Shown: piece by piece, positions 949-48,466 of the stretch
Position numbering within the stretch: position 1 is the first letter of the stretch
Layout: every line of letters begins with the position of its first letter
Assembly: GCA_965285935.1 (NCBI GenBank)
Contig: OZ260666.1
Span: 62,062,001-62,126,000 of the forward strand
DNA from: Ophelia neglecta
Lineage: Eukaryota
Direction: 5' to 3'
Length of the DNA: 64,000 nucleotides
The notes under the pieces: generated by a model
What the model was told of the DNA's origin: nothing
Databases searched by the model: none
The model's input: the letters and a program-made list of their open reading frames with translations, nothing else
Program-made: the position numbers and the translations under genes

Positions 949-1055
949 ATGAACATCATGGTCATCTGGGTTTGGGGGCATCACATCAGGCACATCTCTC
1001 TTCCGTCGCCTTACAGCAGGTCTAGTCAGGGAAACTAGATATGCTTTCAGCAAGC
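949..1055 (-). CDS. Coding exon of the KIAA1549-like gene: (G)LLKAYLVSLTRPAVRRRKRDVPDVMPPNPDDHDVH
   Basis: Acceptor ttcttgttgcag|GC (phase 1, matching the giant-exon donor) and donor CAT|gtaaga (phase 0). Contains a polybasic RRRKR proprotein-convertase motif. Confidence 0.85.
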
Positions 1056-1259: not shown

Positions 1260-4200
1260 CCCTCTCTATCTGTTTGATGTAGTCTGCTTCTGTAGAGTTG
1301 TGACCATACTGAGGTCGGATGGTCATCACCATCAGTTTGTCGTCTCCCACAACCAGTGGAGTGATAGTGGTCATTGGTTGAGGTGTAGTATAAGGCCGAG
1401 GAGAGGTATTTGGGCCAGGGAGATATTGTCCTGTGACCCCAGCTGAGCTTGCAGAGATTACACTTCCCAGGTCAGTGAATGCTTGGCTGGCAGTTTCTAT
1501 CTCTGTAGTGGCATGTGGCCGATTGTCGATGGACATTGTATTAAAAGAGGGTGAGACTGCTGCTTCATAATCTGACCCAGCTGTCACAGTCTTCGTCTTA
1601 TATATTGTCTCATTACCACTCACAAGAGTTTCAGGTAGAAGAGGAACAGGAGAAGAGAGGGAAAGAAGGCCAGTAAGCATAGGGGAGGCAGTTAGAATGT
1701 CAGAGGACAAGTCAGGGGTAAAGGCGGAAGGTGAAATTGAAGAGCTCTCGAAGGATAAACTAGGAATGATAGGAAGCATATTGCTTTGTAGATGCATGGT
1801 TTTTGGATCTAAATAGGAGGCATTTTTTGGATTTAAACTGGGTGATTTCTGAATGGAATCATTACCAGTTGTCTTAGCGGGGGACCAAAGGTCAGAAGCA
1901 ACATAATTCATTGTTGAATGTGATGATTCCAAACTATAAGATGTTACTGGTGTGCTGGCCACAAGGTTACCTGTAGTCCATGTTATATTTAGCAGTTTTG
2001 TGACTTCCTTACTGGGGGGTACAGTTTGCATGAAATAAGATGTCAAATTGTCCAAATCGATTTGACTTATTCCAATACTTTGAAGACCAACACCACTGGA
2101 AACCACATGGGAACTAGCAAAATATTTCATTGACCCATGAGGCAGAAACTGGGTGTCATTGCTACTTACAGACGTTAATGAGGTGGTCTCTGGTAAGACA
2201 GTTGCACTGGCAAGTACTGGAGCTAGCGAGACCTTTGCAGACCAGGGCAAGTATATGCTTCTCTCTGACATTACTAGTAAGCTATGTTTAATGGAAGGTA
2301 ATGAACTTTCCCTTTCCAGTTGGGATCTATTTAATTGACTACCTCTCATAAATTGATATACAGAACTTTCTGTAGAATTTATAAACAAGGTTTTGTTTGC
2401 TGTTGGTAAGAAAGAGAATGATGCTGTGGGGACGTGTGGCACAGTGCTACTTATAGGTTTACTGAGAGACATACTTGGACTTAGACTAGGAAGTGAAGGT
2501 AAAGAATAATGTCCTGTCAGGAACATATCACTATAAAGGGGGGTGAATGTAGACACTGTATCAGTCATGGTGGGGGAAATGAAGCTACTATCAGAAAGGT
2601 AGATACTACTTGCATATATTGTCAATAATTCACTATCAGAAAAACCCACGCTTGAGTTGGACGAATATACTAAGCTTTCACTTTCAACTAAATTAATTGG
2701 AAGATTATCACTTGAACCAACTGAACTGTTATCAGAAATAAAAGAAAGGGAGAACAATGATTCTCGTGTTCTGTTAAAAAAAGAAAGGGAATCACTAGGA
2801 TAAACATTGGTGTTGTAGACTGCAGTAGGATGCATTGAGGTGCTGTCATTGAGTGTTGGCCTGAAAGACAGATAAGTGGAAAGGGTGATATCACTTGCAC
2901 TTGGAAATGCAATTACAGTGGGAATTGTGATTAAAGTTTCACTTATTGAAGGCAAAATAGTTGCACTGTCTGAGATAAATGATGGACTATTGCTAACATA
3001 TGAGAAAGATGGGGTGGTGCTACTTTCATATTCACTGTCACTTGTAACAGGAATCTGGGACTGGCTATCTGAAAGCAATGTAGAAATTCTTCCACTGGGA
3101 AATATTCCTATACTTTCACTGCTGGGTGAAAACAGGATCCTTTCATTGTTTACAAGTGAGGAGGAAAATGTCCACAAGTCTGTAGGCATCAAGGGTAATC
3201 TATATGATTGATTTCTGGACCAGTTTTTGCTTGAAGAGTATACCCATGTCTCCAATCCAAGGGGTGCTGTTGGTAGGATTGATGTAGGTAAACTGGCGAT
3301 TGGATCTGGGTAAAATGATATGCTCTCAATTGATATAGGAGTACTTGAAATTCTGTCTTTTATTGTAGCCTTCATAGACTGATGATCCTTTGTTGAAACC
3401 AAAACAACACTATCACTTAGAGATGGAAAAATTAAAATACCATCAATGCCTGCCAAACTATTATTAGACAATGGAAATATAGATGTATTGCTATTCTGAA
3501 TATCTGTTAATATTTTGCTGGGAAATATTGAACTACTTTTACTTTCTGGCAGGAGTGGAGTTGTCCACAGAGAATCATTTGGGTGGGCTAATGCCGTATT
3601 CCTAAATAAAGGTGATTTTGACATGATACCCTTTATTGTTGACACAAAAGACATACTTTCACTTGGAAGTAGATTGCCTTCAGAAAGGAGTCTGCTTGAC
3701 ATAGTTGGATACAGCAGCATGCTATCATTAATTGTGGGCACTAAAGTTGGGAAAATGTTGGTAATCATTGATCCAGTATTGTTAGCAGCTGGTAAACTAG
3801 GTAGGCTACTATTAAATGAAGACCTCCATTTAATGCTACCACTTGCTTCGGTTGTAAAGCTCTTGATAGAATTGGGAATTATGGTAAACATTGTATATGT
3901 GACATTGGGAGTAAAAAAGTGGTTGTAATTTGGTGAGAGGGAACTTGGCGGGGTCTTAAATGAAGGGGAAACAGTTTGCAGAATCATTGAAGGTAAACTG
4001 ATGGCTGGATCTGGATGAACTGACATGTTCTCATTAGAAATATGAAAGCTTGAGAAACTTTCTGGAATTGGGTCCACCAAAGATTGATTATCACTTAGTG
4101 ACATCCAATAACTTTCACTTTCAGTTGGTAAAATTGACAAGATGTAACTGTCAACCAAACTATCATAAGGCATTGGAGATAAAGCAGTAATGTCATTTGG

Positions 4201-7200
4201 AAAGCCTGTAATTGTTTCTATTGGATAAAATGACATGTAGACATTTTCTGAAGGGTGAATGGATGAACTTTCTAGTTGTGTAGGAACATTTAAGTGACTA
4301 TCAATTGGAAAAGCTGATAAATAACTGCCAGGCAGGGGAAATGTTGACGTGCTATCTGATGAAGTTGATGAAACTGTGAAGCTTTCTCTTTGAAATGTCA
4401 TTGTGCTATCATGGGAGTTGACCAGTTCTGACATATAATCACTTACAGTTGGAGACAGTAACCTGCTGTTATAAATTGTTGACAATAAAGGTGGATTAAC
4501 ACTTGAGAAAGCTGATGTAGAATTCCCAACAGATGGAAAAGCAGACAGGATGTCACTAAATGAAGATACCAATGGCATGTTATTACTTGTGTCTATTGGA
4601 AAGCTATTATTAGAAGTGGGAAGTGTGGTCATCATTTTATCTGTCACATTGGAAGAAAGAAAGTGGCTGTCATTTGATGAAGGGAATTGAGTCTCAAAAC
4701 CAGAAACTGTAGGCAAAATCATTGAAGCTAAACTGAGGCTGGGATCTGGAGACATTGACTTAATCTCATTTGAAATAGGAAAGCCTGACAGACTTTCGTT
4801 TGTAGGATCAGTCAATGACTTACCATAGCTTGGTGAAATCAAATAGCTTTCTATTTGGGTGGGAAAAATAACAATGCTTTCACTGTAGACTAAACTGTCA
4901 TAAGTTATTGTCAGTTTAGCAATACTGCTATCTGAAAGACCTGTCATTGTTTCACGCAAAAGTAACGGCACACTACTACTTTCTATAGGGAGAGTATATT
5001 GACTCTCATGCTGTGCTGGAAAATTTGAGACTCTGTTGATTGAAAAAGCTGACACACTACCATTAGACATAGGAAATGTGGACATGCTATCAGATATAAT
5101 AGTTGAAACTGACATGCCTTCACTAGGAAATGTCACGGTGCCATCATCTGAAGTGGTCAGGTTCTTAGTTGGAGCCATGGACACACTGCCATTAAATGTT
5201 GGTAATAAAGTGGGAGCCGAATTTGAGAGAATTGAGAGGGTACTGCTTACCGTTGGAAAAGCAGCAGACAGGCTATCACTAAAGGAAGCTATCATCATAT
5301 GCATGCTATCACTTAGCTCTATCGAAAAGTTCTTGCTAGACTTGGGAAGTAAGGTCATTATTGCATCTGTCACATTGGGAGAAGGAAGGTGGTTATCATT
5401 TGATGAAGAAATGCTCATGCTATCTTTGGATTCTGCTGAAAAACTTTTACTAGACATAGGGATTATGGTTTTATATGTCACACTGGAAGCAAGAAGTTGG
5501 ATATCATTTGATGAAGGAAAACTGAGAAGAGTCTCCTGTGCAAGAGAAACTGTGGATAGGATCATTGATGGCAATCGGAGGCCTGAATCTGGAACTGATG
5601 ACATGCTTTCATTTGAAATATCAATGTTGGACAGATCCTGTTTTCTTGGACCCGACAATGACTGGCTATACTGGGGTGAAATCAAATAATTAGTTCTTTG
5701 CGTTGGGAAAATTGGTGTGCTGCCTCTAACACCAAAACTATTACTAGACTTCAGAAATGTATATGCTAGAAGTGATTCGCTGTTTTTATCAGTATGTAAG
5801 GCATGGACGCTTTCACTCATTGAAGGTGACAATGGTAAGATTTCACTTGTATGCTTGGAAAAGCTATAACTGGCAGTTGCGTGTAGGGTCATCATCGAAT
5901 CTGTTGCATTTGGGGAAAGAAAAATACTGTTGTCTGATGAGAACACCAACTTTAGACTCTCACTTGGCATAAGTGGTGTGTTTTCATCAACTTTGGGGAA
6001 CAATGATGAACCATGCTTTTTTAACTGTAACACAGAGGAGCTATGAATTGTTACTTTGGGAACATTGGAAACACTGGTAGTTTCCAATGGCACAACAGAC
6101 TTATTGTAAGTTAGTTCAGATAATCCAGAGAAGCTTTGGCTTTGGAAAATAGAACTACTGGGGTCTGGGGGGAGAAAGTTAGTTTGGTTTTTGATAGATG
6201 TAGAAAAAAGTTCTGTACTGACTACATTGGACTGAGTGTTACTACTTGAAGCAATACTAGGTATATGATCAGTGGAAGAAAGAGGCACAAGACTAAAACT
6301 TTGCTGTAATACAGACAATGTGCTTTGGCTAAGTGACATGGTACTTTGAAATAATGAATTATTGCTTGAAAAGGGAGGCCTAGAAATTAAATCTATGGCT
6401 GAAGACAGGGATAATGGGATATTGTTTAATACTGTTGAATTTGAAACTGAAAATAAGGATAAATTAGCATTTATAGGCGCAGTAATGGAAAAGTTTTCAG
6501 TAGATAGTAACTGAGTGAAGCTATCTGTTTTAAACATAGCATTTGTATCCACAGCAGTCGGATACATTGACCTGCTAGTATAAGGTAAAGTGGGTAAAGT
6601 ATTAAGTGTCGGGATAAATTCAGATCTGTCGTTGGGTAACAATAAAAGACTATCTACTGACGATAAAATGGAAGGAATTGTGTAAGGGCTTCCACTGGCT
6701 AACTTCGAACGCCTGTTTATTGGACGGGAATAGTTAGGGCTTGTACTTGGTAATGGGGGCAGATTGGTTCCTAAGGGGGAATAATCCGGATTAATAGTTT
6801 GAAAATTAATTTGGTTCTCCAATAAGGTGGGGTGGTTAGGGCTCATATTGGACACAATCGAAAGACTGTCTGCTGAAGGGGATAAGTTAGTGGTGGTACT
6901 GGGCAATGCAGAAAAGTTATCTACTGAAGTGCCATAGTAAGGGATAGTGGTGGGTAACACAGAAAATGAATATACCAATGGGATATTTGTTGACATACCA
7001 TTATTTTTTTCTGTCTCAGATGATTTAAAAGCGGCTGGGAAAGCTGTTTCACTGACACGTTTTACTTCTGACTTACTCATTATTGGAGGGGCTAAATTCC
7101 ACGAGCTTCTGTCAATTAATGATGGATTGGAGAGACTGGCACTTTGGGTTGCACTGGGAGAGAATAGTGGACTCTCAGACGGAAATGCCACTAATACACT

Positions 7201-10200
7201 TTCCTTGTTAAAGGAGTTAATCTGGTTATTACCCGATGAATTCATATATACATCACTTTGGGCTGAGGAGATGGAAAAACCATCACTTTTAGGTTTTACA
7301 TCAGAAGAATTGGCCCCAAGTGGTGATCGATGAGAAAATAGATTGCTTTTCAAATAGATGGAACTAGAACCTGGAACTACTGTATTGCTCAAACGACCAG
7401 TGGATGGCTCAAACATGTTCACACTTGGTGAACTGTGAAGCAAACTATAGCTTTTGGAATTCCCCATGACGGATGCAAATACAAACAAGCTATCCCCAGG
7501 TGCAGAATTTGTAGTTAAACTACTAGCTTCTAAATACATATTGCTATTTATATCACTGGGAAAGGTTGGAATGCTATATCTCCAACTGGGTTGCTCATCT
7601 GAGAGAACAAAGCTGTCTGTTTGGATATTTAAACTGGTACGGATTTCCACAGAATGAATTAATGGCAATTTGGTTTCAATTCTTATAGGTTGAGATATAA
7701 TACTAGAAGATCTAGTCTCAAGTGTAAAGCTTTCTGATTCGGACAGTAAAATCGAATTGTACTCAGTTGAGTGAGCCATTGATGATGGCAGTACGCTTGT
7801 AGCTGACAAAGATGGATAATGTTCATCTGGTAACAAAAAGCTAGTCATGGATTCACTGTCCAAAAGAGGAGTTGTGTTATCACTAGTTGAAGAAGACATT
7901 GCTTTGATGGCTTGACTTAGTTGAAGATCGTCTGAAAGTGAGTCTCGCGGATTGAGTGACAAACCTTTAGGTAGATTGTAAGATGATGACACAACTTCTC
8001 TTTGAAAGGGAGACGAGGCACTTATCTCACTCGATTTTAGAATGCTTTGGATGGCTTCAGTGTTTAGGATTGTTGGTGTTAGGCTTGGTTCAAGTAAGCT
8101 AGACCCACTATTACTCCACTGAGAAGTCATATGTGGAATATTAGTTGAATTAATAGCCTTAGCTGTGTCATACTGTGAGCTATCAGACCCACCGTCGGCA
8201 AAGGAAGGACTTGGCATCCTGGTATTAAGAGAAATTCGAGATGCCAAACGTTCACTATGATGGGAGGAACGCAAGGCGCTATTCTCTACTAATTGTGAAT
8301 AGTCATGTAGGCCACCATTCAGGTTGGGAGGGATTTCGCTGGATATGTGGTGATCAGAAGTCTCCAGGTCATTCAAAGACGTTGAAAGTATTGCAGGTGA
8401 AATTGGTTTGGTAACTGACGACTGTATCACTTTGGTACTAGAAGAACTAGAAGAACCTAGAAGATGCATGCTTTCACGCTTCTCTTTGGTGCTTGAAGTT
8501 ACAGACAAATCAAATTTTGGTGGGACTGGAACAGCTCCTTTTGATATGCTGAACTGTATAAAGCGTTTAGTACGGTCAACACTTTTAATGATGGGAAAAA
8601 CAGATTGACTTGCCGCAGTGTGTCTATTTTCTCTGTGCGTTGAAAGTTTGTTGTTTTGTGTAGAAGACCGTGAATACATGTTTGTTGGAGTCCCAATAGG
8701 TGATGTTATCAAGGTCTCTGGAGAGGTGGGGAGTGGAGGAGTTCTAGTGGACGACAATTGGTAAAAACCTGCAGTTCCTTGTATGGACTGTGAAACAACG
8801 GAATCATTTACACCGACGGTTCTCAAAACAAACTTTTGAGATGATGCTGATGATACCAAACTTGCTATGGCCAAAGATAGTAATTTCATTCTACTAGAAG
8901 TGGAACTACCAGCCCAACTCAAACCATGTGATTTGGAGCTTGCAATACCCAGAAGACCAGTGGAGAGGATAGGGATCAAATTGGAACGCGGGTCCCACAT
9001 AGAAGACTCACCCCATGAAGAACTACTCAGGATCAGTTGCGATTTGCCAAGTTGAGGTAGGCCTTGTATGTCCGTAAATATTGGATTGATATCGCTAAAG
9101 AAATCATCGAATGCTGAAGTCTTTGGCGCCAACTTAGTTGACGCTGAAAAAAGGGAACCATATGGTGAGGGCAGGTGCTCTTGTACATTATCGCTGACAA
9201 TCTTTGACATCATCCTGGAGAGGTATCTACTATCTGCCAAATTGAAATGATTTTGTGATTTATGTGTGCCAACAGTACGGGGCTTATTGTTGCTTAAGTA
9301 TGTTACAGAAGGCCACAGGGTATTTGGAGGTTTTTTACTATGCCAGTTTGGCAAGGATACGAAATTATATCCACTTGCTAAAATCCCAGAGATTTTCGTG
9401 GTGGGTATATCAGAAATGCTATATTGATCCGTCTCACTGTGCTTTGCATCATCGTACATACTAAAGAGCACTGGTTTAGAAGTAAACGACCCTTCACTCC
9501 ACATGTCTCCACGTAAATCAGTTACAAATGTTGCAAGTAGTATAGACATGGTGCCAAGAGGGGCAGATTGATGCATTATACTAGATTTGGATGATGGTAC
9601 CTTTTTAATTGAACTGTATGCGTATATTTCACTAGATTTGCGCGGCCGAAAACCATTTAAGACAGGTCTGGATGGATGTTTTATTCCGGTTTGTGTTGCC
9701 TCCATACCACCAACGGGTCGTATACTAGACTGTGTTACTGTCTTGCTCTCAATGAGCCAGGACGCGGAGGCATTAATGAATTGGGTTGATGATATATTTA
9801 TAACAATTCCAGATGGAGTTACCATAGCGGATTGTGACGGGCCATGACGTAGGTCGAGGCTAGATGTGAACTCCCAACTCTCTGGAAACGACGTAAATTT
9901 TTCACTCGGAAATAATGACATCATGGAATTTTTGGAAGGGAGACTGGATTTTTCGTGAAGTTGGAAATGAACATTTGAGGGACTATCGCGTAGAAAAGCT
10001 GATGCTGTACCGCTAGACAGAGTAAACATGGGAATGCCATCAGATATACTTGTAAAAACTGGTACGCCTTCACCTGGAAACACCATTATGCTATCATTCG
10101 AAGTGAGAAGGTCTGACACGTAGTCATTCAGAGTTGGAGACAGTGACATGTTGTTATTAAATTTGGACAATAATGTTGGAGCAATATTTAAGACATCAGA

Positions 10201-13200
10201 TGCAGCATTGCTAACAATTGGATTACCAAAACTGCTAGCTGGTAACGAAGGCGCAAAGGTCATGAAATTAGTTAGGTCAGAAAAATTATTACTAGAAGTG
10301 GGAATTATGGCCATGGTTATAGCTGTCACATCGGTAGAAAGAAAGTCATTGTTTCTTGATGAGAGGTAACTTAACTCAGTCTCAGACCCATTGGAAACTG
10401 TGGCCAGCATCATTGATAGAATATCAAAGATTGGATCCTTGTAAATTGAAAACGTCTCATTTAATATAGGTAAGTTTGACAGACTTCGGCCTATTGTGTA
10501 AACCAAAGACTGACTGTGCAAAGTAGGAATCAAATCACTTTTCATTCGAGAGGGAGAAAAGGACATGCTTTCACTATGCACAAAACTTTCATAAGGCAAT
10601 AGATATTTAGATGTACTGCTGCCTGAAATACCAGCCAATGTATTACTCGGAGCTACTGGCATAATCAAATTCGTTGATAGGGGAGTGAATAGACTGTTAC
10701 GTCGAGTCAGATTATTAAAGAAAATATCGCTTTGAAAACCTGAAACCCTACTGCCAGAAAGAGGATATAATGATATGTTATCAGGCATGGTCGGAAAACT
10801 TGTAATGTCTCTTTTTTTAAAGGTCATTGTGCTCTCATCTGAAAATATCAGGTTTGACCTATTATCCCTCAATGGTGGAGCGAGCAACATGCTGTCATTT
10901 AATGTTGACAATAAAGAAGGAGCAATATTTGAGAGAAGTGATGCAGTATTTCTAAATGTTGGAAAAGCTGGAAGGCTAGTTTTTATTGAAGGGACAAACA
11001 GCATGATTTTATTTGATTCTGCTAACAATCTATAGCTATAAGTCACACTGGGAGAAAGGGAATCGATGTCCATTGATAATTGGAAACTGGACAGAGTCTC
11101 AAATCCAAGCGAATTTTCTCCGATCACATCCAATAACGAATGGATATTCCTTGTTGAAATCAAATAACTTTCCATTGGTGTGGGGGAAATCGGCATTTGT
11201 TCACTATACACATTCACACTTGAAATCTGAAAGTTGGAGAAACTTTCTTGCATAGGGTCCCCCAACGGTTGATCATCACTTGGTGATATCAAATAACTTT
11301 CACTTTCAGTTGGTAAAATCGACAAGATGTAACTGTCAACCAAACTATCATAAGGCATTGGAGATATAGCAGTAATGCCATTTGGAAAGCCTTTAAATGT
11401 TTCTATTCGATAAAATGACATGATGACATTTTCTGAAGGGTGAATTGATGAACTTTCAAGTTGTGTAGGAACATTTAGGTCACTATTAATTGGAAAAACT
11501 GATAAATAACTGCCAGACAGTGGAAATGTGGACGTGCTATAAGATGAAGTTGGTGAAACTGTGAAGCTTTCTCTTTGAAATGTCATTGTGCTATCATGGG
11601 AGTTGACCAGTTCTGACATATAATCACTTACAGTTGGAGACAGTAACCTGCTGTCATAAATTGTTGACAATAAAGGTGGATTAACACTTGAGAAAACTGA
11701 TGTAGAATTCCCAACAGATGGAAAAGCAGACAGGATGTCACTAAATGAAGATACCAATGGCATGTTATTACTTGTGTCTATTGGAAAGCTCTTATTAGAA
11801 GTGGGAAGTGTGGTCATCATTTTATATGTCACATTGGAAGAAAGGAAGTGGCTGTCATTTGATGAAGGGAATTGAGTCTCAAAACTAGAAACTGTAGGCA
11901 AAATGATTGAAGCTAAACTGAGGCTGGGACCTGGAGACATTGACTTTATCTCATTTGAAATAGGAAAGCTTGAGAGACTTTCGTTTATAGGATCAGTCAA
12001 TGACTTACCATAGCTTGGTGAAATCAAATAACTTTCTATTTGGGTGGGAAAAATCACAATGCTTTCACTGTAGACTAAACTGTCATAAGTTATTGTCAGG
12101 TTAGCTATACTGCTATCTGAAAGACCTGTCATTGTTTCACGCAAAAGTAACGGCATACTACTACTTTCTATAGGGAGAGTATATTGACTCTCATGCTGTG
12201 CTGGAAAATTTGAGACTCTGTTGATTGAAAAAGCTGACACACTACCATTAGACATAGGAAATGTGGACATGCTATCAGATATAATAGTTGAAACTGACAT
12301 GCCTTCACTAGGAAATGTCACGGTGCCATCATCTGAAGTGGTCAGGTTCTTAGTTGGAGTCATGGACACACTGCTATTAAATGTTGGTAATAAAGTGGGA
12401 GCCGAATTTGAGAGAATTGAGAGGGTACTGCTTACCCTTGGAAAAGCAGCAGACAGGCTATCACTAAAGGAAGCTATCATCATATGCATGCTATCACTTA
12501 GCTCTATCGAAAAGTTCTTGCTAGACTTGGGAAGTAAGGTCATTATTGCATCTGTCACATTGGGAGAAGGAAGTTGGTTATCATTTGATGAAGAAATGCT
12601 CATGCTATCTTTGGATTCTGCTGAAAAACTTTTACTAGACATAGGGATTATGGTTTTATATGTCACACTGGAAGCAAGAAGTTGGATATCATTTGATGAA
12701 GGAAAACTGAGAAGAGTCTCCTGTGCAGGAGAAACTGTGGATAGGATCATTGACGGCAATCGGAGGCCTGAATCTGGAACTGATGACATGCTTTCCTTTG
12801 AAATATCAATGTTGGACAGATCCTGTTTTCTTGGACCCGAGAATGACTGGCTATACTGGGGTGAAATCAAATAATTAGTTCTTTGCGTTGGGAAAATTGG
12901 TGTGCTGCCTCTAACACCAAAACTATTACTAGACTTCAGAAATGTATATGCTAGAAGTGATTCGCTGTTTTTATCAGTATGTAAGGCATGGACGCTTTCA
13001 CTCATTGAAGGTGACAATGTAGGGTGTAGGGTCATCATCGAATCTGTTGCATTTGGGGAAAGAAAAATACTGTTGTCTGATGAAAACACCAAATTTAGAC
13101 TCTCACTTGGCATAAGTGGTGTGTTTTCAATAACTATGGGGAACAATGATGAACTGTGCATTTTTAACTGTAACACAGATGTGCTATGAATTGAAACTTT

Positions 13201-19200: not shown

Positions 19201-22200
19201 TGTCATTGTTTCACGCAAAAGTAACGGCACACTACTACTTTCTATAGGGAGAGTATATTGACTCTCATGCTGTGCTGGAAAATTTGAGAGTCTGTTTATT
19301 GAAAAATCTGACATGCTACCATTAGACATAGGAAATGTGGACATGCTATCAGATATAATAGTTGAAACTGACCTGCCTTCACTAGGAAATGTCACGGTGC
19401 CATCATCTGAAGTGGGCAGGTTCTTAGTTGGAGACGTGGACACACTGCCATTAAATGTCGGTAATAAAGTGGGAGCCGAATTTGAGAGAATTGAGAGGGT
19501 ACTGCTAACAGTTGGAAAAGCAGCAGACAGGCTATCACTAAAGGAAGCCATCATCAAATGCATGCTATCACTTAGCTCTATCGAAAAGTTTTTGCTAGAC
19601 GTGGGAAGTAAGGTCATTATTGCATCTGTCACATTAGGAGAAGGAAGGTGGTTATCCTTTGATGAAGAAATGCTCATGCTATCTTTGGATTCTGCTGAAA
19701 AACTTTTACTAGACATAGGGATTATGGTTTTATATGTCACACTGGAGGCAAGAAGTTGGTTATCATTTGATGAAGGAAAACTGAGAAGAGTCTCCAGTGC
19801 AGGGGAAACTGTGGACAGGATCATTGATGTCAATTGGATGCGTGAATCTGGAAATAATGACATTCTATCATTTGAAATATCAATATTGGACAGATTCTGT
19901 TTTCTTGAACCCGAGAATGACTGGCTATACTGAGGCGAAATCAAATAATTAGTTCTTTGCGCTGGGAAAATTGGTGTGCTGCCTCTAACACCTAAACGAT
20001 TACTAGGCATTAGAAATGTATATGCTAGAAGTGATTTGCTGTTTTTATCAGTATGTAAGGCATGGATGCTTTCACTCATTGAAGGTGACAATGTTAAGAC
20101 TTCCCTTGGATGCTTGGAAAAGCTATAACTGGCAGTTGCGTGTAGGGTCATCATTGTATCTGTTGCATTTGAGGAAAGAAAAATACTGTTGTCTGATGAG
20201 AACACCAACTTTAGACTCTCACTTGGCATAAGTGGTGTGTTTTCAATAACTATGGGGAACAATGATGAACTGTGTTTTTTAAACTGTAATACAGATGAGC
20301 TATGTATTGGAACTTTGTGAACATTGGAAACACTGGTAGTTTCCAATGGCATAACAGACTTATTGTAATTTAGTTCAGAGAATCCAGAGAAGCTTTGGCT
20401 TTGGAAAATAGAACTACTGAGGTCTGGGGGGAGAAAGTTAGTTTGGTTTTTGTTAGATGTAGCAGTGGAAGAAAGAGGCACAAGACTTAAACTCTGCTGT
20501 AATACAGACAATGTGCTTTGGCTAAGTGACATGGTACTTTGAAATAATGAATTATTGCTTGAAAAGGGAGGCCTAGAAATTAAATCTACGGCTGAAGACA
20601 GGGAGAATAGGATATTGTTTAATACTGTTGAATTTGAAACTGAAAATAAGGACAAATTAGCATTTACTGGCGCAGTAATGGAAAAGTTTTCAGTAGATAG
20701 TAACTGAGTCAAGCTATCTGTTTTAAACATAGCATTTGTATCCACAGCAGTCGAATACATTGACCTGCTAGTATAAGGTAAAGTGGGTAAAGTATTAAGT
20801 GTAGGGATAAATTCAGATCTGTCGTTGGGTAACATTAAAAGACTATCTACTGACGATAAAATGGAAGGGCTTCCACTGGCTAACTTCGAACGCCTGTTTA
20901 TTGGACGGGAATAGTCAGGGCTTGTACTTGGTAATGGGGGCAGATTGGTTCCTAAGGGGGAATAATCCGGATTAATAGTTTGCAAAACAGTTTGGTTCTC
21001 CACTAAAGTGGGGTGGTGAGGGCTCATATTGGACACAATAGAAAGACTGTCTGCTGAAGGGGATAAGTTAGTGGTGGTACTGGGCAATGCAGAAAAGTTA
21101 TCTACTGAAGTGCCATAGTAAGGGATAGTGGTGGGTAATGCAGAAAATGAATGTACCAATGGGATATTGGTTGACATACCATTATTTTTTTCTGTCTTAG
21201 ATGATTTAAAAGCGGCTGGGAAAGCTGTTTCACTGACACTTTTTACTTCTGACTTACTCATTATTGGATGGGCTAAATTCCACGAGCTTCTGTCAATTAA
21301 TGATGGATTGGAGAGACTGACACTTTGTGTTGCACTGGGAGAGAAACGTGGACTCTCAGACGGAAATGCCACTAATAAACTTTCCTTGTTAAAGGAATTC
21401 ATCTGGTTATCACCCGATGAATTCATATATACATCACTTTGGGCTGAGGAGATGGGAAAACCATCACTTTTAGGTTTTAAATCAGAAAAATTTGCTCCAA
21501 CTGGTGATCGATGAGAAAATAGATTGCTTTTCAAATAGATTGAACTAGAACCTGGAACTACTGTATTGCTCAAACGACCAGTGGATGGCTCAAACATGTT
21601 CATACTTGGTGAAATGTGAAGCAAACTATAGCTTTTGGAATTCCCCATGACGGATGCAAATACAAACAAGTTATCCCAAGGTGCAGAATTGGTAGTTAAA
21701 CTACTAGCTTCTAAATACATATTGCTATTTACATCACTGGGAAAAGTTGAAATGCTATGACTCCAACTGGGTTGCTCATCTGAGAGAACAAAGCTGTCTG
21801 TTTGGATATTTAAACTGGTACTGATTTCTACAGAATGAATGAATGGCAATTTGGTTTCAATTCTTATTGGTTGAGATATAATACTAGAAGATCTAGTCTC
21901 AAGTGTAAAGCTTTCTGATTCGGACAGTAAAATCGAATTGTACTCAGTTGAGTGAGTCATTGGTGATGGGAGTACGCTTGTAGCTGACAAAGATTGATAA
22001 TGCTCATCTGGTAACAAAAAGCTAGTCATGGATTCACTGTCCAAAAGAGGAGTTGTGTTATCACTAGTTGAAGAAGACATTGCTTTGATGGCTTGACTTA
22101 GTTGAAGATCGTCTGAAAGTGAGTCTCGCGGATTGAGTGACAAACCATTAGGTAGTTTGTAAGATGGTGACACAACTTCACTTTGAAAGGAAGTCGAGGC

Positions 22201-25200
22201 ACTTATCTTACTCGATTTTAGAATGTTTTGGATAGATTCAGTGTTTATGATTGTTGATGATAGGCTTGGTTCAAGTAAGCTGGGCCCACTATTAGTCGAT
22301 TGAGAAGTCATATGTGGAATGTTAGTTGAATTAATAGCCTTAGCTGTGTCATACTGTGAGCTATCAGACCCACCGTCGGCAAAGGAAGGACTTGGCATCC
22401 TGGTATTAAGAGAAATTCGAGATGCCAAACGTTCACTATGATGTGAGGAATGCAAGGCCCTATTATCTACCAATTGTGAAGAGTCATGTAGGCCACCGTT
22501 CAGGGTGGAAGGGATTTCGCTGGATATGTGATGATCAGACGTCTCCAGGTCATTGAAAGACGTTGAAAGTATTGCAGGTGAAATTGGTTTGGTAACTGAC
22601 GACTGTATCACTTTGGTACTAGAAGAACTAGAAGAACCTAGAAGATGCATGCTTTCACGCTTCTCTTTGGTGATAGAAGTTACAGACAAATCAAATATTG
22701 GTAGGACTGGAACAGCTCCTCTTGATAAGCTGAACTGTATAAAGGGTTTGGTACGGTCGACACTTTTAGTGATGGGAAACACAGACTGACCTGCTGCAGT
22801 GTGTCTACTTTCACTGAGTGTTGAAAGTTTCTTGTTTTGTGAAGGAGACCGTGAAAACATGTTTGTTGGCGTCCCAATAGGTGATGTTATCAAGGTCTCT
22901 GGAGAGGTGGGGAGAGGAGGGGTTCTAGTGGACGACAATTGGTAAAAACCTGCAGTTCCTTGTATGGACTGTGAAACAACGGAATCATTTACACCGACGG
23001 TTCTCAAAACAAACTTTTGAGATGATGCTGATGATACCAAACTTGCTATGGCCAAAGATAGTAATGTCATTCTACTAGAAGTTGAACTACCAGCGCAACT
23101 CAAACCATGTGATTTGGAGCTTGCAATACCCAGAAGACCAGTGGAGAGCATAGGGATCAAACTGGAACGCGGGTCCCACATAGAAGACTCACCCCATGAA
23201 GAACTACTCAGGATCAGTTGCGATTTGCCAAGTTGAGGTAGGCCTTGTATGTCCGTAAATATTGGATTGATATCGCTAAAGAAATCAACGAATGCTGAAG
23301 TCTTTGGCGCCAACTTAGTTGACGCTGAAAAAAGGGAATCATATGGTGAGGGCAGGTGCTTTTGTACATAATCGCTGACATTCTTTGACATCATCCTGGT
23401 AAGGTATCTACTATCTGCTAAATTGAAATGATTCTGTGATTTATGTGTGCCAACAGTAAGGGGTTTATTGTTGCTTAAATATGTTACATAAGGCCACAGG
23501 GTATTTGTAGGTTTTTTACTATGCCAGTTTGGCATTGATACGAATTTATATCCACTTGCTAAAAACCCAGAGATTTTCCTGGTGGGTATATCAGAAATGC
23601 TATATTGACCCGTCTCACTTTGCTTTGCATCATCGTACATACTAAAGAGCACTGGTTTAGAAGTATACGACCCTTCACTCCATATGTCTCTACGTGAATC
23701 AGTTACAACTGTTGCAAGTAGTATAGAGATGGTGCCATGAGGGGCAGATTGATGCATTATACTAGATTTGGATGATGGTACCTTTTTAATTGAACTGTAT
23801 GGGTATACTTCCCTGGATTTGCGCGGCCGAAAATCATTTAAGACAGGGCTGGATGGATGTTTTATTCCGGTTTGTGTTGCCTCCATACCACTAACGGGTC
23901 GTATACTAGACTGTGATGCTGTCTTGCTCTTAATAAGCCAGGACGCGGAGGCATTACTGAATTGGGTTGATGATATATTTATAACAATTCCAGATGGGGT
24001 TTCCATATCGGATTGTGACGGTCCCTGAAGTAGGTATGACGTGAACTCCCAACTCTCTAGAAACGCCGTGAATTTTTCACTCGGAAATAATGACATTAAT
24101 AAATTTTCGGAAGGGAGACTGGATATTCCGTGAAATTGGAAATGAACATTTGAGGGACTATCACGAAGAAAAGCTGATGCTGTACCGCTAGACAGAGTAG
24201 ACATGGGAATGCCATCAGATATACTTGTAAAAACTGGTACGCCTTCACCTGGAAACACCATTATGTTATCATTCGAAATGAGAAGGTCTGACACGTAATC
24301 ATTCACAGTTGGAGACAGTGACATGCTGTTATTAAATTTGGACAATAATGTTGGAGCAATATTTAAGACATCAGATGCAGCATTGCTATCAATTGAATTA
24401 CCATAACTGCTAGCTGGTAAAGAAGGCGCAAAGGTAACGATATTATTTAGGTCGACAGAAAAATTATAACTCGAAGTGGGAGTTATGGCCATGGTCATAA
24501 CTGTCACATCCGTAGAAAGAAAGTCATTGTTTCTTGATGAGAGGTAACTTAACTCAGTCTCAGACCCATTGGAAACTGTGGCCAGCATCATTGATAGAAA
24601 ACCAAAGATGGGATCCTTGTAAATTGAAATCGTCTCATTCAATATAGATAAGTTTGACAGACTTCGGCCTATTGTGTAAACCAAAGACTGACTGTGCATA
24701 GGAGGAATCAAATCACTTTTCATTCGAGAGGGGGAAAAGGACATGCTTTCACTCTCCGCAAAACTTTCATAAGGCAATAGATATTTAGATGTACTGCTGC
24801 CTGATATACCAGCCAATGTATTACTCGGAGCTACTGGCATAATCAAATTCCTTGATAGGGGAGTGAATAGACGAGGCAGATTATTTAAGAAAATATCGCT
24901 TTGAAAACCTGAAACCTTACTGCCAGAAAGAGGATATAATGATATATTATCAGGCATGGTCGGAAAACTTGTAATGTCTCTTTCTTTAAAGGTCATTGTG
25001 CTCTCATCTGAAAATATCAGGTTTGACCTATCATCCCTCAATGGTGGAGCGAGCAACATGCTGTCATTTAATGTTGACAATAAAGAAGGAGCAATATTTG
25101 AGAGAAGTGATGCAGTATTTCTAAATGTTGGAAAAGCTGGAAGGCTAGTTTTTATTGAAGGGACAAACAGCATGATTTTATTCGATTCTGCTAACAATCT

Positions 25201-28200
25201 ATAGCTATAAGTAGGAACTATAGTAACCATTATATCTGTAACACTGGGAGAAAGGGAATCGATGTCCATTGACAATTGGAAACTGGACATAGTCTCAAAT
25301 CCAAGCGAATTTTCTCTGATCGCATCCAATAACGAATGGCTATTCCTTGTTGAAATCAAATAACTTTGAATTGGTGTTGGGGAAATCGGCATTTGTTCAC
25401 TATAAACGTTCTCATTTGAAATCTGAAATTTGGAGAAACTTTCATGTATAAAGTCCACCAACGATTGCTTATCATTTGTTGACATCAAATAAATTTCCCT
25501 TTCAGTTGGTAAAATCGACAAGATGTAACTGTCAACCAAACTATCATAAGGCATTGGAGATATAGCAGTAATGCCATTTTGAAAGCCTGTAATTGTTTCT
25601 ATTGGATAAAATGACATGATGACATTTACTGAAGGGTGAATCAATGAATTTTCAAGTTGTGTAGGAACATTAAAGTGATTGTCAATTGGAAAAGCTGATA
25701 AATAACTGCCAGACAGGGGAAATGTTGACGTGCTATTAGATGAAGTTGGTGAAACTGTGAAGCTTTCTCTTTGAAATGTCATTGTGCTATCATGGGAGTT
25801 GACCAGTTCTGACATATAATCAGTTACAGTTGGAGACAGTAACCTGCTGTCATAAATTGTTGACAATAAAGGTGGATTAACACTTGAGAAAACTGATGTA
25901 GAATTCCCAACAGATGGAAATGCAGCCAGGACGTCACTAAATGAATATACCAATGTCATGTTATTACTTGTGTCTATTGGAAAGCTCTTATTAGAAGTGA
26001 GAAGTGTGGTCATCATTTTATCTGTTACATTGGCAGAAAGGAAGTGGCTGTCATTTGATGAAGGGAATTGAGTCTCAAAACCAGAAACTGTTGGCAAAAT
26101 CATTGAAGCTAAACTGAGGTTGGGATCTGGAGACATTGACTTTATCTCATTTGAAATAAGAAAGCATGACAAACTTTCGTTTGTAGGATCAGTCAATGAC
26201 TTACCATAGCTTGGTGAAATCAAATGACTTTCTATTTGGGTGGGAAAAATCACAATGCTTTCACTGTAGACTAAACCATCATTAGTTATTGTAAGTTTAG
26301 CAATACTGCTATTTGAAATACCTGTCATTGTTTCACTCGAAAATAACGGCACTCTACTACTTTCTATCGGGAAAGTATATTGACTCTCATGCTGTGCTGG
26401 AAAATTTGAGAGACTGTTGATAGATAAAGCTGACACGCTACCATTGGACATAGGAAATGTGGACATGCTATCAGATATGATAGTTGAAACTTCACTTGGA
26501 AATGTTACGGTGACATCATTTGAAGTGGGCAGGTTCTTAGTTGGAGACGTGGACACACTGCCATTAAATGTCGGTAATAAAGTGGGAGCCGAATTTGAGA
26601 GAATTGAGAGGGTACTGCTTACAGTTGGAAAAGCAGCAGACAGGCTATCACTAAAGGAAGCCATCGTCATATGCATGCTATCACTTAGCTCTTTCGAAAA
26701 GTTCTTGCTAGACGTGGGAAGTAAGCTCATTATTGCATTTGCCACATTGGGTAAAGGAAGGTGGTTATCATTTGATGAAGAAATGATCATGCTATCTGTG
26801 GATTCTGCTGAAAAACTCTTACTAGACGTAAGGAGAATGATTTTATACGTCACACTGGAACCAAGAATTTGGATATCATTTGATGAAGGAAAACTGAGAA
26901 GAGTCTCCTGTGCAGGGGAAACTGTGGACAGGATCATTGATGACAATTGGAGGCCTAAATTTGGAACTGATGACATGCTTTCATTTGAAATATCAATGTT
27001 GGTCAGATCCTGTTTTCTTGGACCCGAGAATAACTGGCTATACTGGGGCGAAATCGAATAATTAGTTCTTTGCGTTGGGAAAATTGGTGTGCTGCCTTCA
27101 ACACCTAAACTATTACTTGGCATTAGAAATGCATATGTGAGAAGTGATTCACTGTTTTTATCAGTATTTAAGGCATGAATGCTTTCACTCATTGAAGGTG
27201 ACAATTCCAAGATTTCACTTGGATGCTTGGAAAAGCTATAACTGGCTGTTGCGTGTAGGGTCATCATTGCATCTGTTGCATTTGGGGAAAGAAAAATGCT
27301 ATTGTCTAATGAGAACAGCAACTTTAGACTGTCACTTGGCATAAGTGGTGTGTTTTCATCACCTATGGGGAACAATGATGAACTGTGCATTTTTAACTGT
27401 AACACAGATGAGCTAGGAAATTCTACTTTGGGAACATTGGAAACACTGGTAGTTTCCAATGGCATAACAGACTTATTGAAATTTTGGTCAGAGAATCCAG
27501 GGATACTTTTGCTTTGGAAAATAAAACTACAAAGTTCTGGGGGGAGTAAGTTTGTTTGGTTTTTATTAGATGTAGAAAAAAGTTCTGTACTGACTAAATT
27601 GGACTGATTTATACTACTTGAAGCAATACTAGATATATGATCAGTGGAAGAAAGAGGCACAAGGCTAATACTTTGCTTTAATACAGACAATGTGCTTTGG
27701 CTAAGTGACATGGTACTTTGAAATAATGAGTTGCTTGAAACGGGAGGCCTAGAAATTAAATGTACGGCTGAAGACAAAAAGAATGGGATATTGTTTAATA
27801 CTTTTGAATTTGAAACTGAAAATAAGGACAAATTAGCATCTACAGGCGGAGTAATGGAAAAGTTTTCAGTAGATAGTAACTGAGTTAAGCTATCTGTTTT
27901 AAACATAGCATTTGTATCCACAGCATTCGGATACATTGACCTGCTATTAGGTAAAGTTGGTAAATTGCCTAAAGTATCATTTGCAGAATGGTAAATTGGT
28001 GGAGTCCCATTTGGCAAAATAGTTATGCTATCACTTCCAGAGGGGTACAACAATGAATCAGTCGGAGATACAAAGTCCGAGATGGATTCAGGCCTTATAG
28101 GCGAGTTAGTGATGAGTGAGGCAGAAATAGTATTAAGTGTAGGTATAAATTCAGATCTGTCGTTGGGTAACATAAAAAGACTATCTACTGACGATAAAAT

Positions 28201-31200
28201 ATAAGGAATTGTGTAAGGGCTTCCACTGGCTAACGTCGAACGCCTGTTTATTGGACGGGAATAGTTTGGACTTGTACTTGGTAATGGGGGCAGACTGGTT
28301 CCTAAGGGGGAATCGTCCGCAATAATAGTTTGCAAATCAGTTTGGTTCTCCACTAAGGTGGGGTGGTAAGAGCTCATACTGGACACAATCGAAAGACTGT
28401 CTGCTGAAAATGATAAGTTAGTGGTGGTACTGGGCAATGCAGAAAAGTTATCTACTGAAGTGCCATAGTTAGGGATAGTGGTGGGTAATACAGAAAATGA
28501 ATTCACCAATGGGATATTTGTTGACATACCATTATTTTTTTCTGTCTTAGATGATTTAAAAGCTGATTTACTGACACTTTTTACTTCTGACTTACTCATT
28601 ATTGGAGGGGCTAAATTCCAAGAGCTTCTGTCAATTAATGGTGGATTGGAGAGACTGACACTTTGGGTTGCACTGGGAGAGAATAGTGGACTCTCAGACG
28701 GAAATACCACTAATAAACTTTCCTTGTTAAAGGAATTCATCTGGTTATCACCCAATGAGTTCATATATACATCACTTTGGGCTGAGGAGATGGAAAAACC
28801 ATCACTTTTATGATTTAAATCAGAAGAATTTGCCCCAAGTGGTGATCGATGAGAAAAAAGATTGCTTTTCAAATAGATGGAACTAGAACCTGGAACTACT
28901 GTATTGCCCAAACGACCAGTGGATGGCTCAAACATGTTCATACTTGGTGCAATGTGAAACAAACTATAGCTTTTGGAATTCCCCTTGACGGTTGCAAATA
29001 CAAACAAGCTATTCCAAGGTGCAGAATTGGTAGTGAAAGTACTATCTTCTAAATACATATTGCTATTTACATCACTGGGAAAAGTTGAAATGCTATGACT
29101 CCAACTGGGTTGCTCATCTGAGAGAACAAAGCTGTCTTTATGGATCATTAAACTATAACTGCTTTCCACAGAATGTATTAATGCCAATTTGGTTCCACTT
29201 TTTACTTGTTGAGCTATGATACTAGAAGAGCTAGTCTCAAGTGTAAAGCTTTCAGATTTGGAAAGTAAAATCGACTTGTTCTCATTTGAGTGGTTCATTG
29301 ATGATGGGCGTATACTTGTAGCTGGCAAAGATGGGAAACGTTCACCTGGTGACAAAAAGCTAGTCATGGAGTCACTGTCCACAAGAGGATTTGTGTTATC
29401 CCTGGTTGAAGAAAACATTGCTGCTATGGCTTGGCTTAGTTGAAGATTATTTGAAAGCGAGTCTCGAGGATTGGCTGAAAAACTATTAGGTAGTTTGTAA
29501 GATGAAAACAAACCTTTACTTTGAAAATGAGACGAGGCACTTATCTCACTCGATTTTAGAATAGTTCGCGTAGATTTAGTGTATATGATTGTTGATGTTA
29601 AGCTTGGTTCAAGTAAGCTGAACACACCAAAAGTCGTTTGAGAAGTCATATGTGGAGTGTAAGTTGAATTAGTAGCCCTAACTGTGTCATACTGTGAGCT
29701 ATCAGACTCAACATCGGCAAATGAAGGACTTATTTGCACCCTGGTATTAAGAGAAATTCGAGATGCCAATCGGTCATTATGATCTAAGGAATGCAAGGCG
29801 TTATTTTCTACTGATTGTGACGAGTCAGGTTTTTTAAGTGGGCCACTATTCATCGCGGGAGGAATTTCGCTGGATATGTGGTGATCAGAAGTCTCCAGGT
29901 CATTCACAGAAGCGGAAATTATTGCAGGTGAAACTGGTTTGGTAACTGACGACTGTATCACTTTGGTACAAGAAGAACTAGAAGAACCTAGAAGATGCAT
30001 GCTTTCACGCTTCTCTTTGGTGATAGAAGTTACAGACAAATCAAATATTGGTAGGACTGGAACAGCTCCTCTTGATAAGCTGAACTGTATAAAGGGTTTG
30101 GTACGGTCGACACTTTTAGTGATGGGAAACACAGACTGACTTGCTGCAGTGTGTCTATTTTCACTGAGTGTTGAAAGTTTCTTGTTTTGGGTAGAAGACC
30201 GTGAATACATGTTCGTTGGAGTCCCAATAGGTGATGTTATCAAGGTCTCTGGAGAGGTGGGGAGTGGAGGGGTTCTAGTGGACGACAATTGGTAAAAACC
30301 TGCAGTTCCTTGTTTGGACTGTGAAACAACGGAATCATTTACACCGACTGTTCTCAAAACAATCTTCTGAGAAGATGCTGATGATACTAAACTTGCTATA
30401 GCCAAAGATAGTAATGACATCTTTCTAGATGTTGAGCCAGCCCAACTCAAACCATGTGATTGGGAGCTTGCAACACTCAGAAGACCAGTGGAGAGGATAG
30501 GGATCAAACTGAAACTTGGGTCCCAAAAAGAAGACTTTTTCCGTGAATAACTACTCACGATCACTTGGGATTTTCCCTGTTGAGGTAAGCCTAGTATGTC
30601 GGTAAATATTGGATTGATATCATTAAGAGAATCGACAAATCCTGAAGTGTTCGGCACTTCTGACATACTCATTAATGAAGGGGCTAAGTACTTCCAGCTT
30701 CTCTCAATTCCTGATGGATTAGGGAGACTATCACTGGGATATATTATGACACTGTCAGTTGAAGAGGAGTAGGATAGATGACTGTTTTTCTCAGAGGAAA
30801 ATTCCAACGATAAACTTTCACTGTCAGATAAATATATCGGTCTGTCATTGGGAGAGCTTGAACTTACATCCCTGTGGGTTGGGAATATTGAAAATTCCCC
30901 ACAACTGATGACCATCTTTGACATTATGCTTGGGTGGAATTTACTATCCAATGAATTTGAATATTCCTGTAGTATATGTGTACCTAAACTATGGGATGTA
31001 GCTAGAATGAATAGTTTGTTTGTATTCTCTATCTCTCTTGAATCAGAGGCCCTAGTTACGTTTATGAGAAGAGACACAGTCCCTTTGGAATTGGGGACCT
31101 GTGACTTCAGTTTAGCAGACACATTGGAAATGAGCAACAGAGTCAAAGGTATATCAAGCATTGTAGAACTATGCTGCATTATTGTTGAAATAACAAAATC

Positions 31201-48399: not shown

Positions 48400-48466
48400 G
48401 TAAGTGCTTCCAAAGGACGGCATTAGAAAAGGCATGAAGAATGGCCTCTTACTGGTCCAGTATTGA

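What the first reader, a model, noticed from the sequence alone, without database searches (positions are those of the whole stretch)
4040..30625. ~2,400-aa protein repeat unit in ~3.7 copies, with every indel preserving frame
Seen: copy-to-copy offsets change only by multiples of 3. Between copies 3 and 4 they run 7074, 7137, 7185; the 63-bp step is loss of LSLNPRDSLSDDLQLSQAIKA in copy 3. There are many substitutions but no stops. Known: mucin VNTR units are typically tens to a few hundred residues. Inference: selection maintains reading frame and length rather than exact sequence, which argues that the repeat region is translated and that length may be polymorphic.
Basis: partly seen in the sequence, partly recalled or inferred. 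Interest (0 to 1): 0.8.

Follow-up and report, generated by a model that had tools for sequence, protein, structure and literature searches.

The report
In-frame 7-kb repeats in giant exon
A spiralian invertebrate gene for a very long, sugar-carrying membrane protein lengthened its outer stalk by copying a 7.1-kb coding block nearly four times inside one 34.7-kb exon without ever breaking the reading frame; this is an extreme case of how mucin-like proteins are already known to grow, not a new kind of system.

Summary
On the minus strand, one 34,728-nt exon (35987 to 1260) is open for 11,576 codons. Its middle (window 4099-30732) holds 3.74 tandem copies of a 2,358-2,468-aa unit. Each unit contains about 4.5 older sub-repeats of about 245 aa. 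All 17 secure indels between copies are multiples of three. The coding frame has 0 stops in 8,878 codons; the other five frames have 260-912. A non-coding 550-nt array in the same window carries mostly 1-nt indels. dN/dS is 0.67-0.81, and divergence steps down 9%, 5%, 2% towards the 3' end. This fits successive tandem duplications in a translated, weakly constrained, predicted-disordered Ser-rich stalk.

Downstream exons add a juxtamembrane module with an RRRKR furin-type site, a membrane helix and a long tail. That layout matches KIAA1549 and tethered mucins. The Pfam KIAA1549 model, however, hits another locus in this genome, not this gene.

No relatives of the ectodomain were found in public proteins. 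Expression, true copy number and copy-number polymorphism could not be tested. Another first-reader note on this same stretch had already noted the giant exon. Verdict: a new variant of a known kind, of moderate interest.

The parts
1260..35987 (-). Single giant coding exon, 34,728 nt = 3 x 11,576. It starts and ends in phase 1.
   Evidence: Open frame. Donor G|GTGAGT after base 1260. Pyrimidine tract plus CAG acceptor ending at 35988. No Pfam domain anywhere in it.
4099..30732 (-). Super-repeat array: 3.74 tandem copies of a unit of about 7.1 kb (2,358-2,468 aa), ORF residues 1745-10622.
25477..30732 (-). P1: the partial 5'-most copy (1,752 aa) and the oldest, about 90.7% nt identity to the others. 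It carries a private 165-nt insertion.
18355..25476 (-). P2: full copy (2,374 aa), 95.4% and 94.9% nt identity to P3 and P4.
11281..18354 (-). P3: full copy (2,358 aa), 97.8% nt identity to P4. It lacks 63, 42 and 6 nt relative to P4.
4099..11280 (-). P4: full copy (2,394 aa), the youngest pair with P3. The array ends at a sub-repeat unit boundary.
15037..15038 (-). Site of the in-frame 63-nt (21-aa) deletion in gene-order copy 3.
   Evidence: Read-derived contigs carrying the extra 63 nt break here.
7901..7963 (-). The 63 nt retained in copy 4. The homologous segments in copies 1 and 2 start at 29482 and 22144.
16936..20340 (-). Block of about 4.5 sub-repeats of about 245 aa inside one period. 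Units are 29-46% identical to each other, but 87-90% identical to the same-position unit in other periods. Equivalent blocks lie at 24037-27444, 9862-13218 and 2668-6078.
   Evidence: hmmsearch iteration; alignment A1. The profile hits only this exon in the genome.
30733..35987 (-). Unique N-terminal part of the exon, about 1,750 aa. The first 260 aa are not Ser-rich and contain two hydrophobic stretches. The start codon and signal peptide are not settled.
1260..2667 (-). Unique C-terminal part of the exon, about 470 aa. It ends in the first strand and helix of the juxtamembrane module.
949..1055 (-). Next exon (phase 1 to 0). It encodes the rest of the helix and an RRRKR furin-type site at 997-1011.
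   Evidence: Canonical acceptor and donor, read; coordinates.
683..835 (-). Following exon (51 aa, phase 0/0), the second half of the juxtamembrane module. The transmembrane exon lies just outside the window at L005:9249-9448 (-).

Best explanation
The flagged stretch is the middle of one 34.7-kb coding exon of a gene for a giant single-pass membrane glycoprotein.

The exon encodes about 11,600 residues. They are Ser-rich (S 21%, T 8%, P 7%) and almost free of cysteine, carry about 190 N-glycan sequons, and are predicted disordered. This reads as a mucin-like stalk. Small downstream exons then add a juxtamembrane module with an RRRKR furin-type site, a membrane helix about 85 residues later, and a long cytoplasmic tail.

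The stalk grew in two stages:
1. An old amplification of a unit of about 245 aa.
2. Three successive in-frame tandem duplications of a 7.1-kb composite block, made of about 1,250 aa of unique sequence plus about 4.5 sub-repeats. The newest copies lie at the 3' end.

Selection removes frameshifts and stops strictly but tolerates most amino-acid changes and in-frame indels. What matters is therefore a long, open, glycosylatable chain. Each block would add roughly 0.6 um of extended chain (inference from general polymer figures).

Shown: the anatomy, the frame conservation, dN/dS below 1, and the downstream exon structure. Inferred: translation, glycosylation, furin cleavage, unequal recombination as the mechanism, and kinship with KIAA1549 (about 55%).
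For: - One open frame of 11,581 codons.
- 17 of 17 indels are 3n.
- 0 stops in the coding frame against 260-912 in the other frames.
- A non-coding array in the same window has mostly 1-nt indels.
- dN/dS is 0.67-0.81, with a significant synonymous excess for five of six pairs.
- Identity forms a ladder: 97.8%, 95% and 90.7%.
- Sub-repeat units cluster by position rather than by copy.
- The array ends at a unit boundary.
- The composition is mucin-like, and the AF2 model of the sub-repeat has pLDDT 34.5 with no secondary structure.
- Four consecutive exons have canonical splice sites and matching phases, and encode RRRKR and a membrane helix.
- Human KIAA1549 is described as signal peptide, O-glycan domain, Ser/Thr region, SEA-like domains with a furin site in the membrane-proximal one, TM and a long C-terminal domain (PMC13570299).
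- The genome's Pfam-positive KIAA1549 gene has the same layout, with a 1,112-aa S/T exon and an RRKR module.
- That gene shares a 16-residue tail motif with this gene (phmmer E = 2e-4 in a targeted search). The motif pattern occurs nowhere else in the genome.
Against: - There is no expression evidence. Only three DNA runs of one sample hold the sequence.
- Copy number rests on the assembly alone. The laid contigs are 100-450 nt and cannot span a unit.
- For the youngest pair, dN/dS does not differ significantly from 1.
- S+T+P is 36%, lower than in classical mucin domains.
- PF12877 gives no hit on any exon of this gene, even at E = 10, and no SEA domain is detected.
- A wrong-strand hit of similar E-value in the reciprocal search shows that short-motif statistics here are soft.
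- No homologue of the ectodomain was found anywhere, so conservation across species cannot be used as support.
Confidence: 0.78

Rival explanations
1. Assembly artefact. Part of the array, especially the 97.8%-identical P3/P4 pair, is really two haplotypes of a heterozygous individual stacked in tandem, so the true copy number is lower.
For: - P3-P4 divergence (2.2%) is within the range of allelic divergence in marine invertebrates (general knowledge).
- Read-derived contigs include variants found in none of the four assembled copies, so the sample is heterozygous here.
- No spanning reads could be examined.
Against: - The window has no N and no contig break.
- The probe finds no separate haplotig elsewhere.
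- P1 and P2 differ by 5-9% and carry private in-frame indels, which is too much for alleles.
- The identity ladder and the phase shift of the youngest duplication fit real tandem events.
Confidence: 0.08
2. The gene is a tethered mucin that converged on the KIAA1549 layout. It is not a KIAA1549 paralogue, so the resemblance is functional only.
For: - PF12877 hits only C9:35.806-35.816 Mb, not this locus.
- Exon-by-exon hmmscan at E = 10 is blank.
- The ectodomains show no significant similarity.
- The only significant match is one 16-residue motif.
- The acceptor phase in front of that motif seems to differ between the two genes.
Against: - The order of parts is the same in both genes: a big S/T exon, a module with a tetrabasic site, TM, and a long tail.
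- The best, though weak, hit of the second juxtamembrane exon falls on the collinear PF12877 exon.
- The motif is unique to the two genes in 762 Mb.
- Even the true orthologue barely reaches the Pfam cut-off exon by exon, at 25 bits.
Confidence: 0.4
3. The similarity gradient reflects concerted evolution (gene conversion homogenising neighbouring copies) rather than the order of duplications. On this reading the copies could all be old.
For: - Identity is mosaic along the unit, 0.94-1.00 for the closest pair in 100-codon bins.
- The array is not an integer number of periods, and its 3' edge abuts diverged sub-repeats.
Against: - After re-registering the periods, the pairwise values form a clean nested ladder over the whole unit.
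- Low-identity bins coincide with indel-rich segments that are low in all pairs. That points to local fast evolution rather than conversion tracts.
Confidence: 0.2
4. The open frame is a recently dead or never-translated sequence (a pseudogene or satellite) that has not yet accumulated stops.
For: No RNA or protein evidence. No homologues.
Against: - There are 11,576 open codons, including about 2,700 outside the repeats, at 38% GC, where a random frame stops about every 15 codons.
- Only 3n indels have accumulated over up to 9% divergence.
- dN/dS is below 1.
- Downstream exons are intact and phase-matched.
Confidence: 0.03

Closest known systems
KIAA1549 (UPF0606, Pfam PF12877), human type I membrane protein
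   Same: The order of parts described in PMC13570299 is the same: a large O-glycosylated Ser/Thr-rich ectodomain, a juxtamembrane SEA-like region with a furin site, one TM and a long cytoplasmic domain. Here RRRKR lies about 85 residues before the helix. One tail motif is shared with this genome's PF12877-positive gene.
   Different: The ectodomain is more than 10 times longer (11,600 aa against about 900) and is built from nested repeats. There is no PF12877 match exon by exon. Only one SEA-like-looking module is present, not three. The tail has its own 10-aa repeat. The type of glycosylation is unknown.
Tethered mucins with giant VNTR exons (MUC12, MUC16, MUC1)
   Same: A single very large exon encodes a disordered, glycosylatable stalk, followed by a juxtamembrane module, TM and tail. 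In-frame length change is the mode of evolution. Human MUC12 alleles reach a 23,080-aa protein (PMC13345508), so the exon size here is not unprecedented.
   Different: The unit is about 2,360 aa, not tens to hundreds of residues. There are only 3.74 copies, diverged by 2-9%, so the array is not homogenised. S+T+P is 36%. No Pfam SEA domain is detected.
MUC5B central-exon super-repeats
   Same: Composite super-repeats inside one exon, each combining a repeat region with unique sequence: four units of 528 aa in a 10.7-kb exon (PMC6780288, citing Desseyn 1997). Variation in the number of whole repeat domains is reported in humans (PMC13345508).
   Different: The unit here is about 4.5 times larger, lacks Cys-rich domains, and belongs to a membrane-anchored protein rather than a gel-forming one.
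Large-unit in-exon coding repeats such as filaggrin (324-aa units) and epiplakin (about 500-aa units); from my own knowledge, not checked here
   Same: Tandem in-frame duplication of long coding blocks within a single exon. The youngest copies are nearly identical.
   Different: Those units are folded or processed functional domains. Here the unit is predicted to be disordered stalk.

Membership tests
KIAA1549 / UPF0606 (PF12877) | Match to the Pfam PF12877 profile above its cut-off | tested here: not met
   The genome-wide six-frame search hits C9:35.806-35.816 Mb only. hmmscan of ten exon translations of this gene at E = 10 gives no PF12877 hit. The test was exon by exon; the spliced protein was not joined or searched.
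KIAA1549 / UPF0606 (PF12877) | Type I topology: large Ser/Thr-rich ectodomain, single TM, long cytoplasmic domain | tested here: met
   Composition. TM exon with a run of hydrophobic residues. Tail exons. The signal peptide is not located.
KIAA1549 / UPF0606 (PF12877) | Furin-type site inside a membrane-proximal SEA-like domain | tested here: inconclusive
   RRRKR is present about 85 residues before the TM. The strand-helix-site-strand pattern is parallel by eye to the orthologue's RRKR exon. The fold was not tested because that needs joined exons. Cleavage cannot be tested here.
KIAA1549 / UPF0606 (PF12877) | Sequence similarity of the cytoplasmic domain to family members | tested here: inconclusive
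   One 16-residue motif is shared with the genome's PF12877 gene (phmmer E = 2e-4, tblastn 0.002-0.003). It is unique to the two loci. Nothing else matches.
Tethered (membrane) mucins | Tandem-repeat Pro/Thr/Ser-rich domain in one large exon | tested here: met
   34.7-kb exon with nested repeats, S+T 29%, P 7%. The composition is less extreme than in classical PTS domains.
Tethered (membrane) mucins | SEA domain (PF01390) next to the membrane | tested here: not met
   No Pfam hit on the exon end or on the two juxtamembrane exons. The spliced module was not tested.
Tethered (membrane) mucins | Dense O-glycosylation of the stalk | not testable with these tools
   Only composition and predicted disorder are available.
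Coding VNTR (polymorphic copy number) | Different copy numbers among individuals | not testable with these tools
   One sample only, and only short contigs. There is a possible allelic form of the 63-nt indel.

The most novel reading that the evidence does not exclude
This is a lineage-specific giant paralogue of KIAA1549. Its extracellular stalk is tuned in steps of about 2,360 residues (about 0.6 um) by unequal recombination between 7.1-kb in-frame modules. Copy number and smaller in-frame indels still segregate in populations. That would make it a natural length series for asking what ectodomain length does in the KIAA1549 family of O-glycosylated receptors.
Probability: 0.2. Interest if true: 0.55.

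Novelty: new variant of a known kind. Interest (0 to 1): 0.36.

Why it matters
The case shows cleanly, with an internal non-coding control, that selection on a mucin-like stalk acts on openness and length rather than on sequence, even when the duplicated block is 7 kb.

If the KIAA1549 kinship holds, it gives that poorly understood family an invertebrate member with an ectodomain ten times longer, and so a natural experiment on stalk length. KIAA1549 is studied mostly as the BRAF fusion partner in a childhood brain tumour.

There is also a practical point. Gene predictors and protein databases miss this gene entirely: no self-hit came back from 1.84 billion representatives. Giant repeat exons in invertebrate genomes therefore remain under-annotated.

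Tried and rejected
- **Pfam.** Scans over the whole exon, one full period, both unique ends and ten downstream exon translations gave nothing meaningful.
- **Word-index protein searches.** All three were blank: a 10,000-aa reference scored on one copy, one full period, and the N-terminal 1,744 aa inside a 5,000-aa reference.
- **Exhaustive phmmer.** The last 1,200 aa of the exon against 1.84 billion representatives gave 0 hits.
- **ESM Atlas.** A look-alike search with a tail exon scored at most 0.77, which is uninformative.
- **AlphaFold2.** The sub-repeat alignment folded to pLDDT 34.5, so no fold search was made.
- **Sequencing runs.** Only three DNA runs of one sample hold the sequence, and none is RNA. 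The laid contigs are too short to size the array, and depth was not used, as the tool advises.
- **KIAA1549 by Pfam.** Rejected for this locus as a formal membership. It is kept as the closest architecture.
- **Ectodomain against the orthologue's S/T exon.** No significant similarity.
- **A lower-order period inside the 245-aa unit.** No clear signal; autocorrelation shows only weak lags at 10 and 28.
- **Retroelement guess.** I took the ORFs at 60-63 kb for a retroelement by eye, but Pfam does not support that.
- **Own-genome DNA search.** It was repeated with 1.5 kb.
- **My own errors.** My first control alignment of the 31-nt array was mis-set and is discarded (first lines). One offset error was corrected.
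Full report
**Where and what.** The window is G000:C9:62,062,001-62,126,000 of a 762-Mb assembly. Earlier notes of this scan call the organism a spiralian invertebrate; I did not check that. The flagged stretch lies on the minus strand inside one open frame, 1219-35964, of 11,581 codons, or 11,593 stop-to-stop.
- The exon ends at 1260 with G|GTGAGT.
- A pyrimidine tract plus CAG acceptor ends at 35988.
- The exon is therefore 34,728 nt = 3 x 11,576, in phase 1 at both ends.
- An earlier first-reader note on this stretch (s1-743183) gives the same coordinates, and another (s1-743285) the same phases.

**The repeat.**
- Tiled self-BLAST and the repeat finder show a tandem super-repeat over ORF residues 1745-10622 (window 4099-30732).
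- A nucleotide MAFFT alignment of the four copies gives 92-97% identity.
- The indel events are 3, 9, 3, 63, 12, 12, 165, 3, 3, 66, 6, 42, 9, 27, 9, 3 and 6 nt. That is 17 events in securely homologous sequence, all multiples of three.
- Two more 3n events lie at the diverged 3' edge. MAFFT's 65+1 and 1+5 split resolves to 66 and 6.

**Controls.**
- Over the same DNA the coding frame has 0 stops in 8,878 codons. The other five frames have 260-912.
- In the upstream non-coding part of the window, a 550-nt tandem array (48,464-51,765) has six units 97.3-99.8% identical. It shows 10 gap patterns, 9 of them not multiples of three and mostly 1 nt.
- The 31/121-nt array at 53,616-55,330 has 5-6% indel columns, and its unit spacings vary by 1-2 nt.
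- The 3n rule is therefore specific to the open frame.

**Selection and history.**
- Identity is mosaic in my first register. Copies 3 and 4 are closest in the first 1,500 codons of the unit, and copies 2 and 3 in the rest.
- I re-registered the periods so that the array ends at residue 10622: P1 partial 25477-30732, P2 18355-25476, P3 11281-18354, P4 4099-11280.
- This gives a clean ladder. P3-P4 is 97.8% identical, P2-P3 and P2-P4 are 95.4% and 94.9%, and P1 against the rest is about 90.7%.
- Nei-Gojobori dN/dS is 0.67-0.71 for the older pairs, with a synonymous excess at P = 4e-4 to 4e-3. It is 0.81 (P = 0.15) for the youngest pair.
- The simplest reading is three successive tandem duplications with the newest at the 3' end. 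Selection against frame loss is strict, and purifying selection on residues is weak.

**Nested structure.**
- An iterated HMM finds about 4.5 units of about 245 aa in each period, and two more diverged units after the array.
- Units at the same position in different periods are 87-90% identical. Units within a period are 29-46% identical. The 245-aa amplification therefore predates the 7.1-kb duplications.
- The 3' end of the array (10622 | 10627) coincides with a unit boundary. This hints at unequal recombination between sub-repeats (inference).
- The array is not an integer number of periods, and I could not reconstruct its exact origin.
- The unit profile matches only this exon in the whole genome. 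A 1.5-kb DNA probe finds only the four copies, so this is not a dispersed element.

**What the protein looks like.**
- Composition is S 21%, L 10%, T 8%, P 7%. There are 16 Cys in 11,581 residues, 9 of them in the first 500, and 189 N-x-S/T sequons.
- Pfam finds nothing.
- AlphaFold2 on the unit alignment gives pLDDT 34.5 and no secondary structure.
- This is a disordered, glycosylatable stalk.

**Downstream exons.** They have canonical splice sites and matching phases:
- 1055-949, carrying RRRKR at 997-1011;
- 835-683;
- a transmembrane exon just outside the window (L005:9448-9249);
- tail exons, including about 12 copies of a 10-residue repeat.

**Comparison with known families.**
- A 2026 JBC paper describes human KIAA1549 as a signal peptide, an O-mannosylated domain, a Ser/Thr region, three SEA-like domains with a furin site in the membrane-proximal one, a TM and a long C-terminal domain. 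It likens the protein to MUC1 (PMC13570299). That is the layout seen here.
- However, PF12877 hits a different gene on the same chromosome (C9:35.806-35.816 Mb) and not this one.
- That gene has a 1,112-aa S/T-rich exon followed by an RRKR-bearing module. It shares one 16-residue tail motif with this gene, and the motif pattern occurs only at these two loci in the genome.
- The pattern was derived from those two sequences, so only its absence elsewhere is informative. A reciprocal search also produced a wrong-strand hit of similar E-value.
- I put kinship at about 55% and file the gene as KIAA1549-like in architecture only.
The SEA-like fold and Pfam membership of the spliced protein are therefore untested.

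**Relatives.** No protein similar to any part of the ectodomain was found by three word-index searches. The exhaustive search of 1.84 billion representatives also found none, not even the protein itself. The gene is unannotated in public collections, and its ectodomain is either lineage-specific or evolving too fast to trace.

**Reads.**
- Only three DNA runs of one sample hold the sequence, and none is RNA.
- The laid contigs are 100-450 nt. They break exactly at the three P3 indel sites: 15037, 13341 and 13019.
- One 451-nt contig is P3-like over 312 nt (3 differences), carries the extra 63 nt, and matches neither copy 2 nor copy 4 there. Three other variants occur in none of the assembled copies.
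- This suggests heterozygosity, possibly including the in-frame 63-nt indel. Contigs can be chimeric between paralogues, however, and copy number could not be checked.

**Verdict.**
- The phenomenon is a large-unit version of something known. MUC5B has four 528-aa composite super-repeats in one exon (PMC6780288). Human MUC12 alleles reach 23,080 aa (PMC13345508).
- What stands out is the unit size (about 2,360 aa), the three-level history, and the KIAA1549-like anchor.
- Interest is moderate.

Noticed in passing
window 48464-51765: A non-coding tandem array of six units of about 550 nt, 97-99.8% identical, in an AT-rich stretch upstream of the giant exon. Each unit holds an 87-codon open frame on the minus strand that is probably fortuitous. 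TRF missed the array because its period exceeds 500. I used it as the neutral indel control.
   Followed up: partly
window 53616-55330: A GC-richer array with strong AT skew. It has a 31-nt unit in a 121-nt higher-order pattern, about 55 units, 79-86% matches and 5-6% indels.
   Followed up: partly
G000:C9:35806226-35816330 (+), loci L023/L024: The genome's Pfam-positive KIAA1549 gene. It has a 1,112-aa S/T-rich exon, then exons matching PF12877 positions 136-189 (with an RRKR site), 197-266, 481-514 and 620-675.
   Followed up: partly
L005:7045-7731 (-), just beyond the window's low end: A cytoplasmic tail exon of the same gene with about 12 in-frame tandem copies of a 10-residue unit (RPDSYTTRD/G type). 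This is a second, small coding repeat in the gene.
   Followed up: no
window 35200-35987 (-): The first 260 or so codons of the giant exon are not Ser-rich and contain two hydrophobic stretches that could be a long signal peptide or anchor. The acceptor CAG is followed at once by GTAATG, as another note of the scan pointed out. Where translation starts is unresolved, and no upstream exon with a signal peptide was evident in 36-53 kb.
   Followed up: partly
G000:C9:62041465-62041648 and C9:35821526-35821859: A short stretch shared between the two loci, 64% identity over 42 aa and matching in several frames. It is most likely a common interspersed repeat, not coding homology.
   Followed up: no
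window 13500-13000 and homologous sites (alignment codons about 1000-1200): An indel-rich, faster-evolving segment of the unit (66-, 6- and 42-nt indels). It is low in identity in all copy pairs.
   Followed up: no
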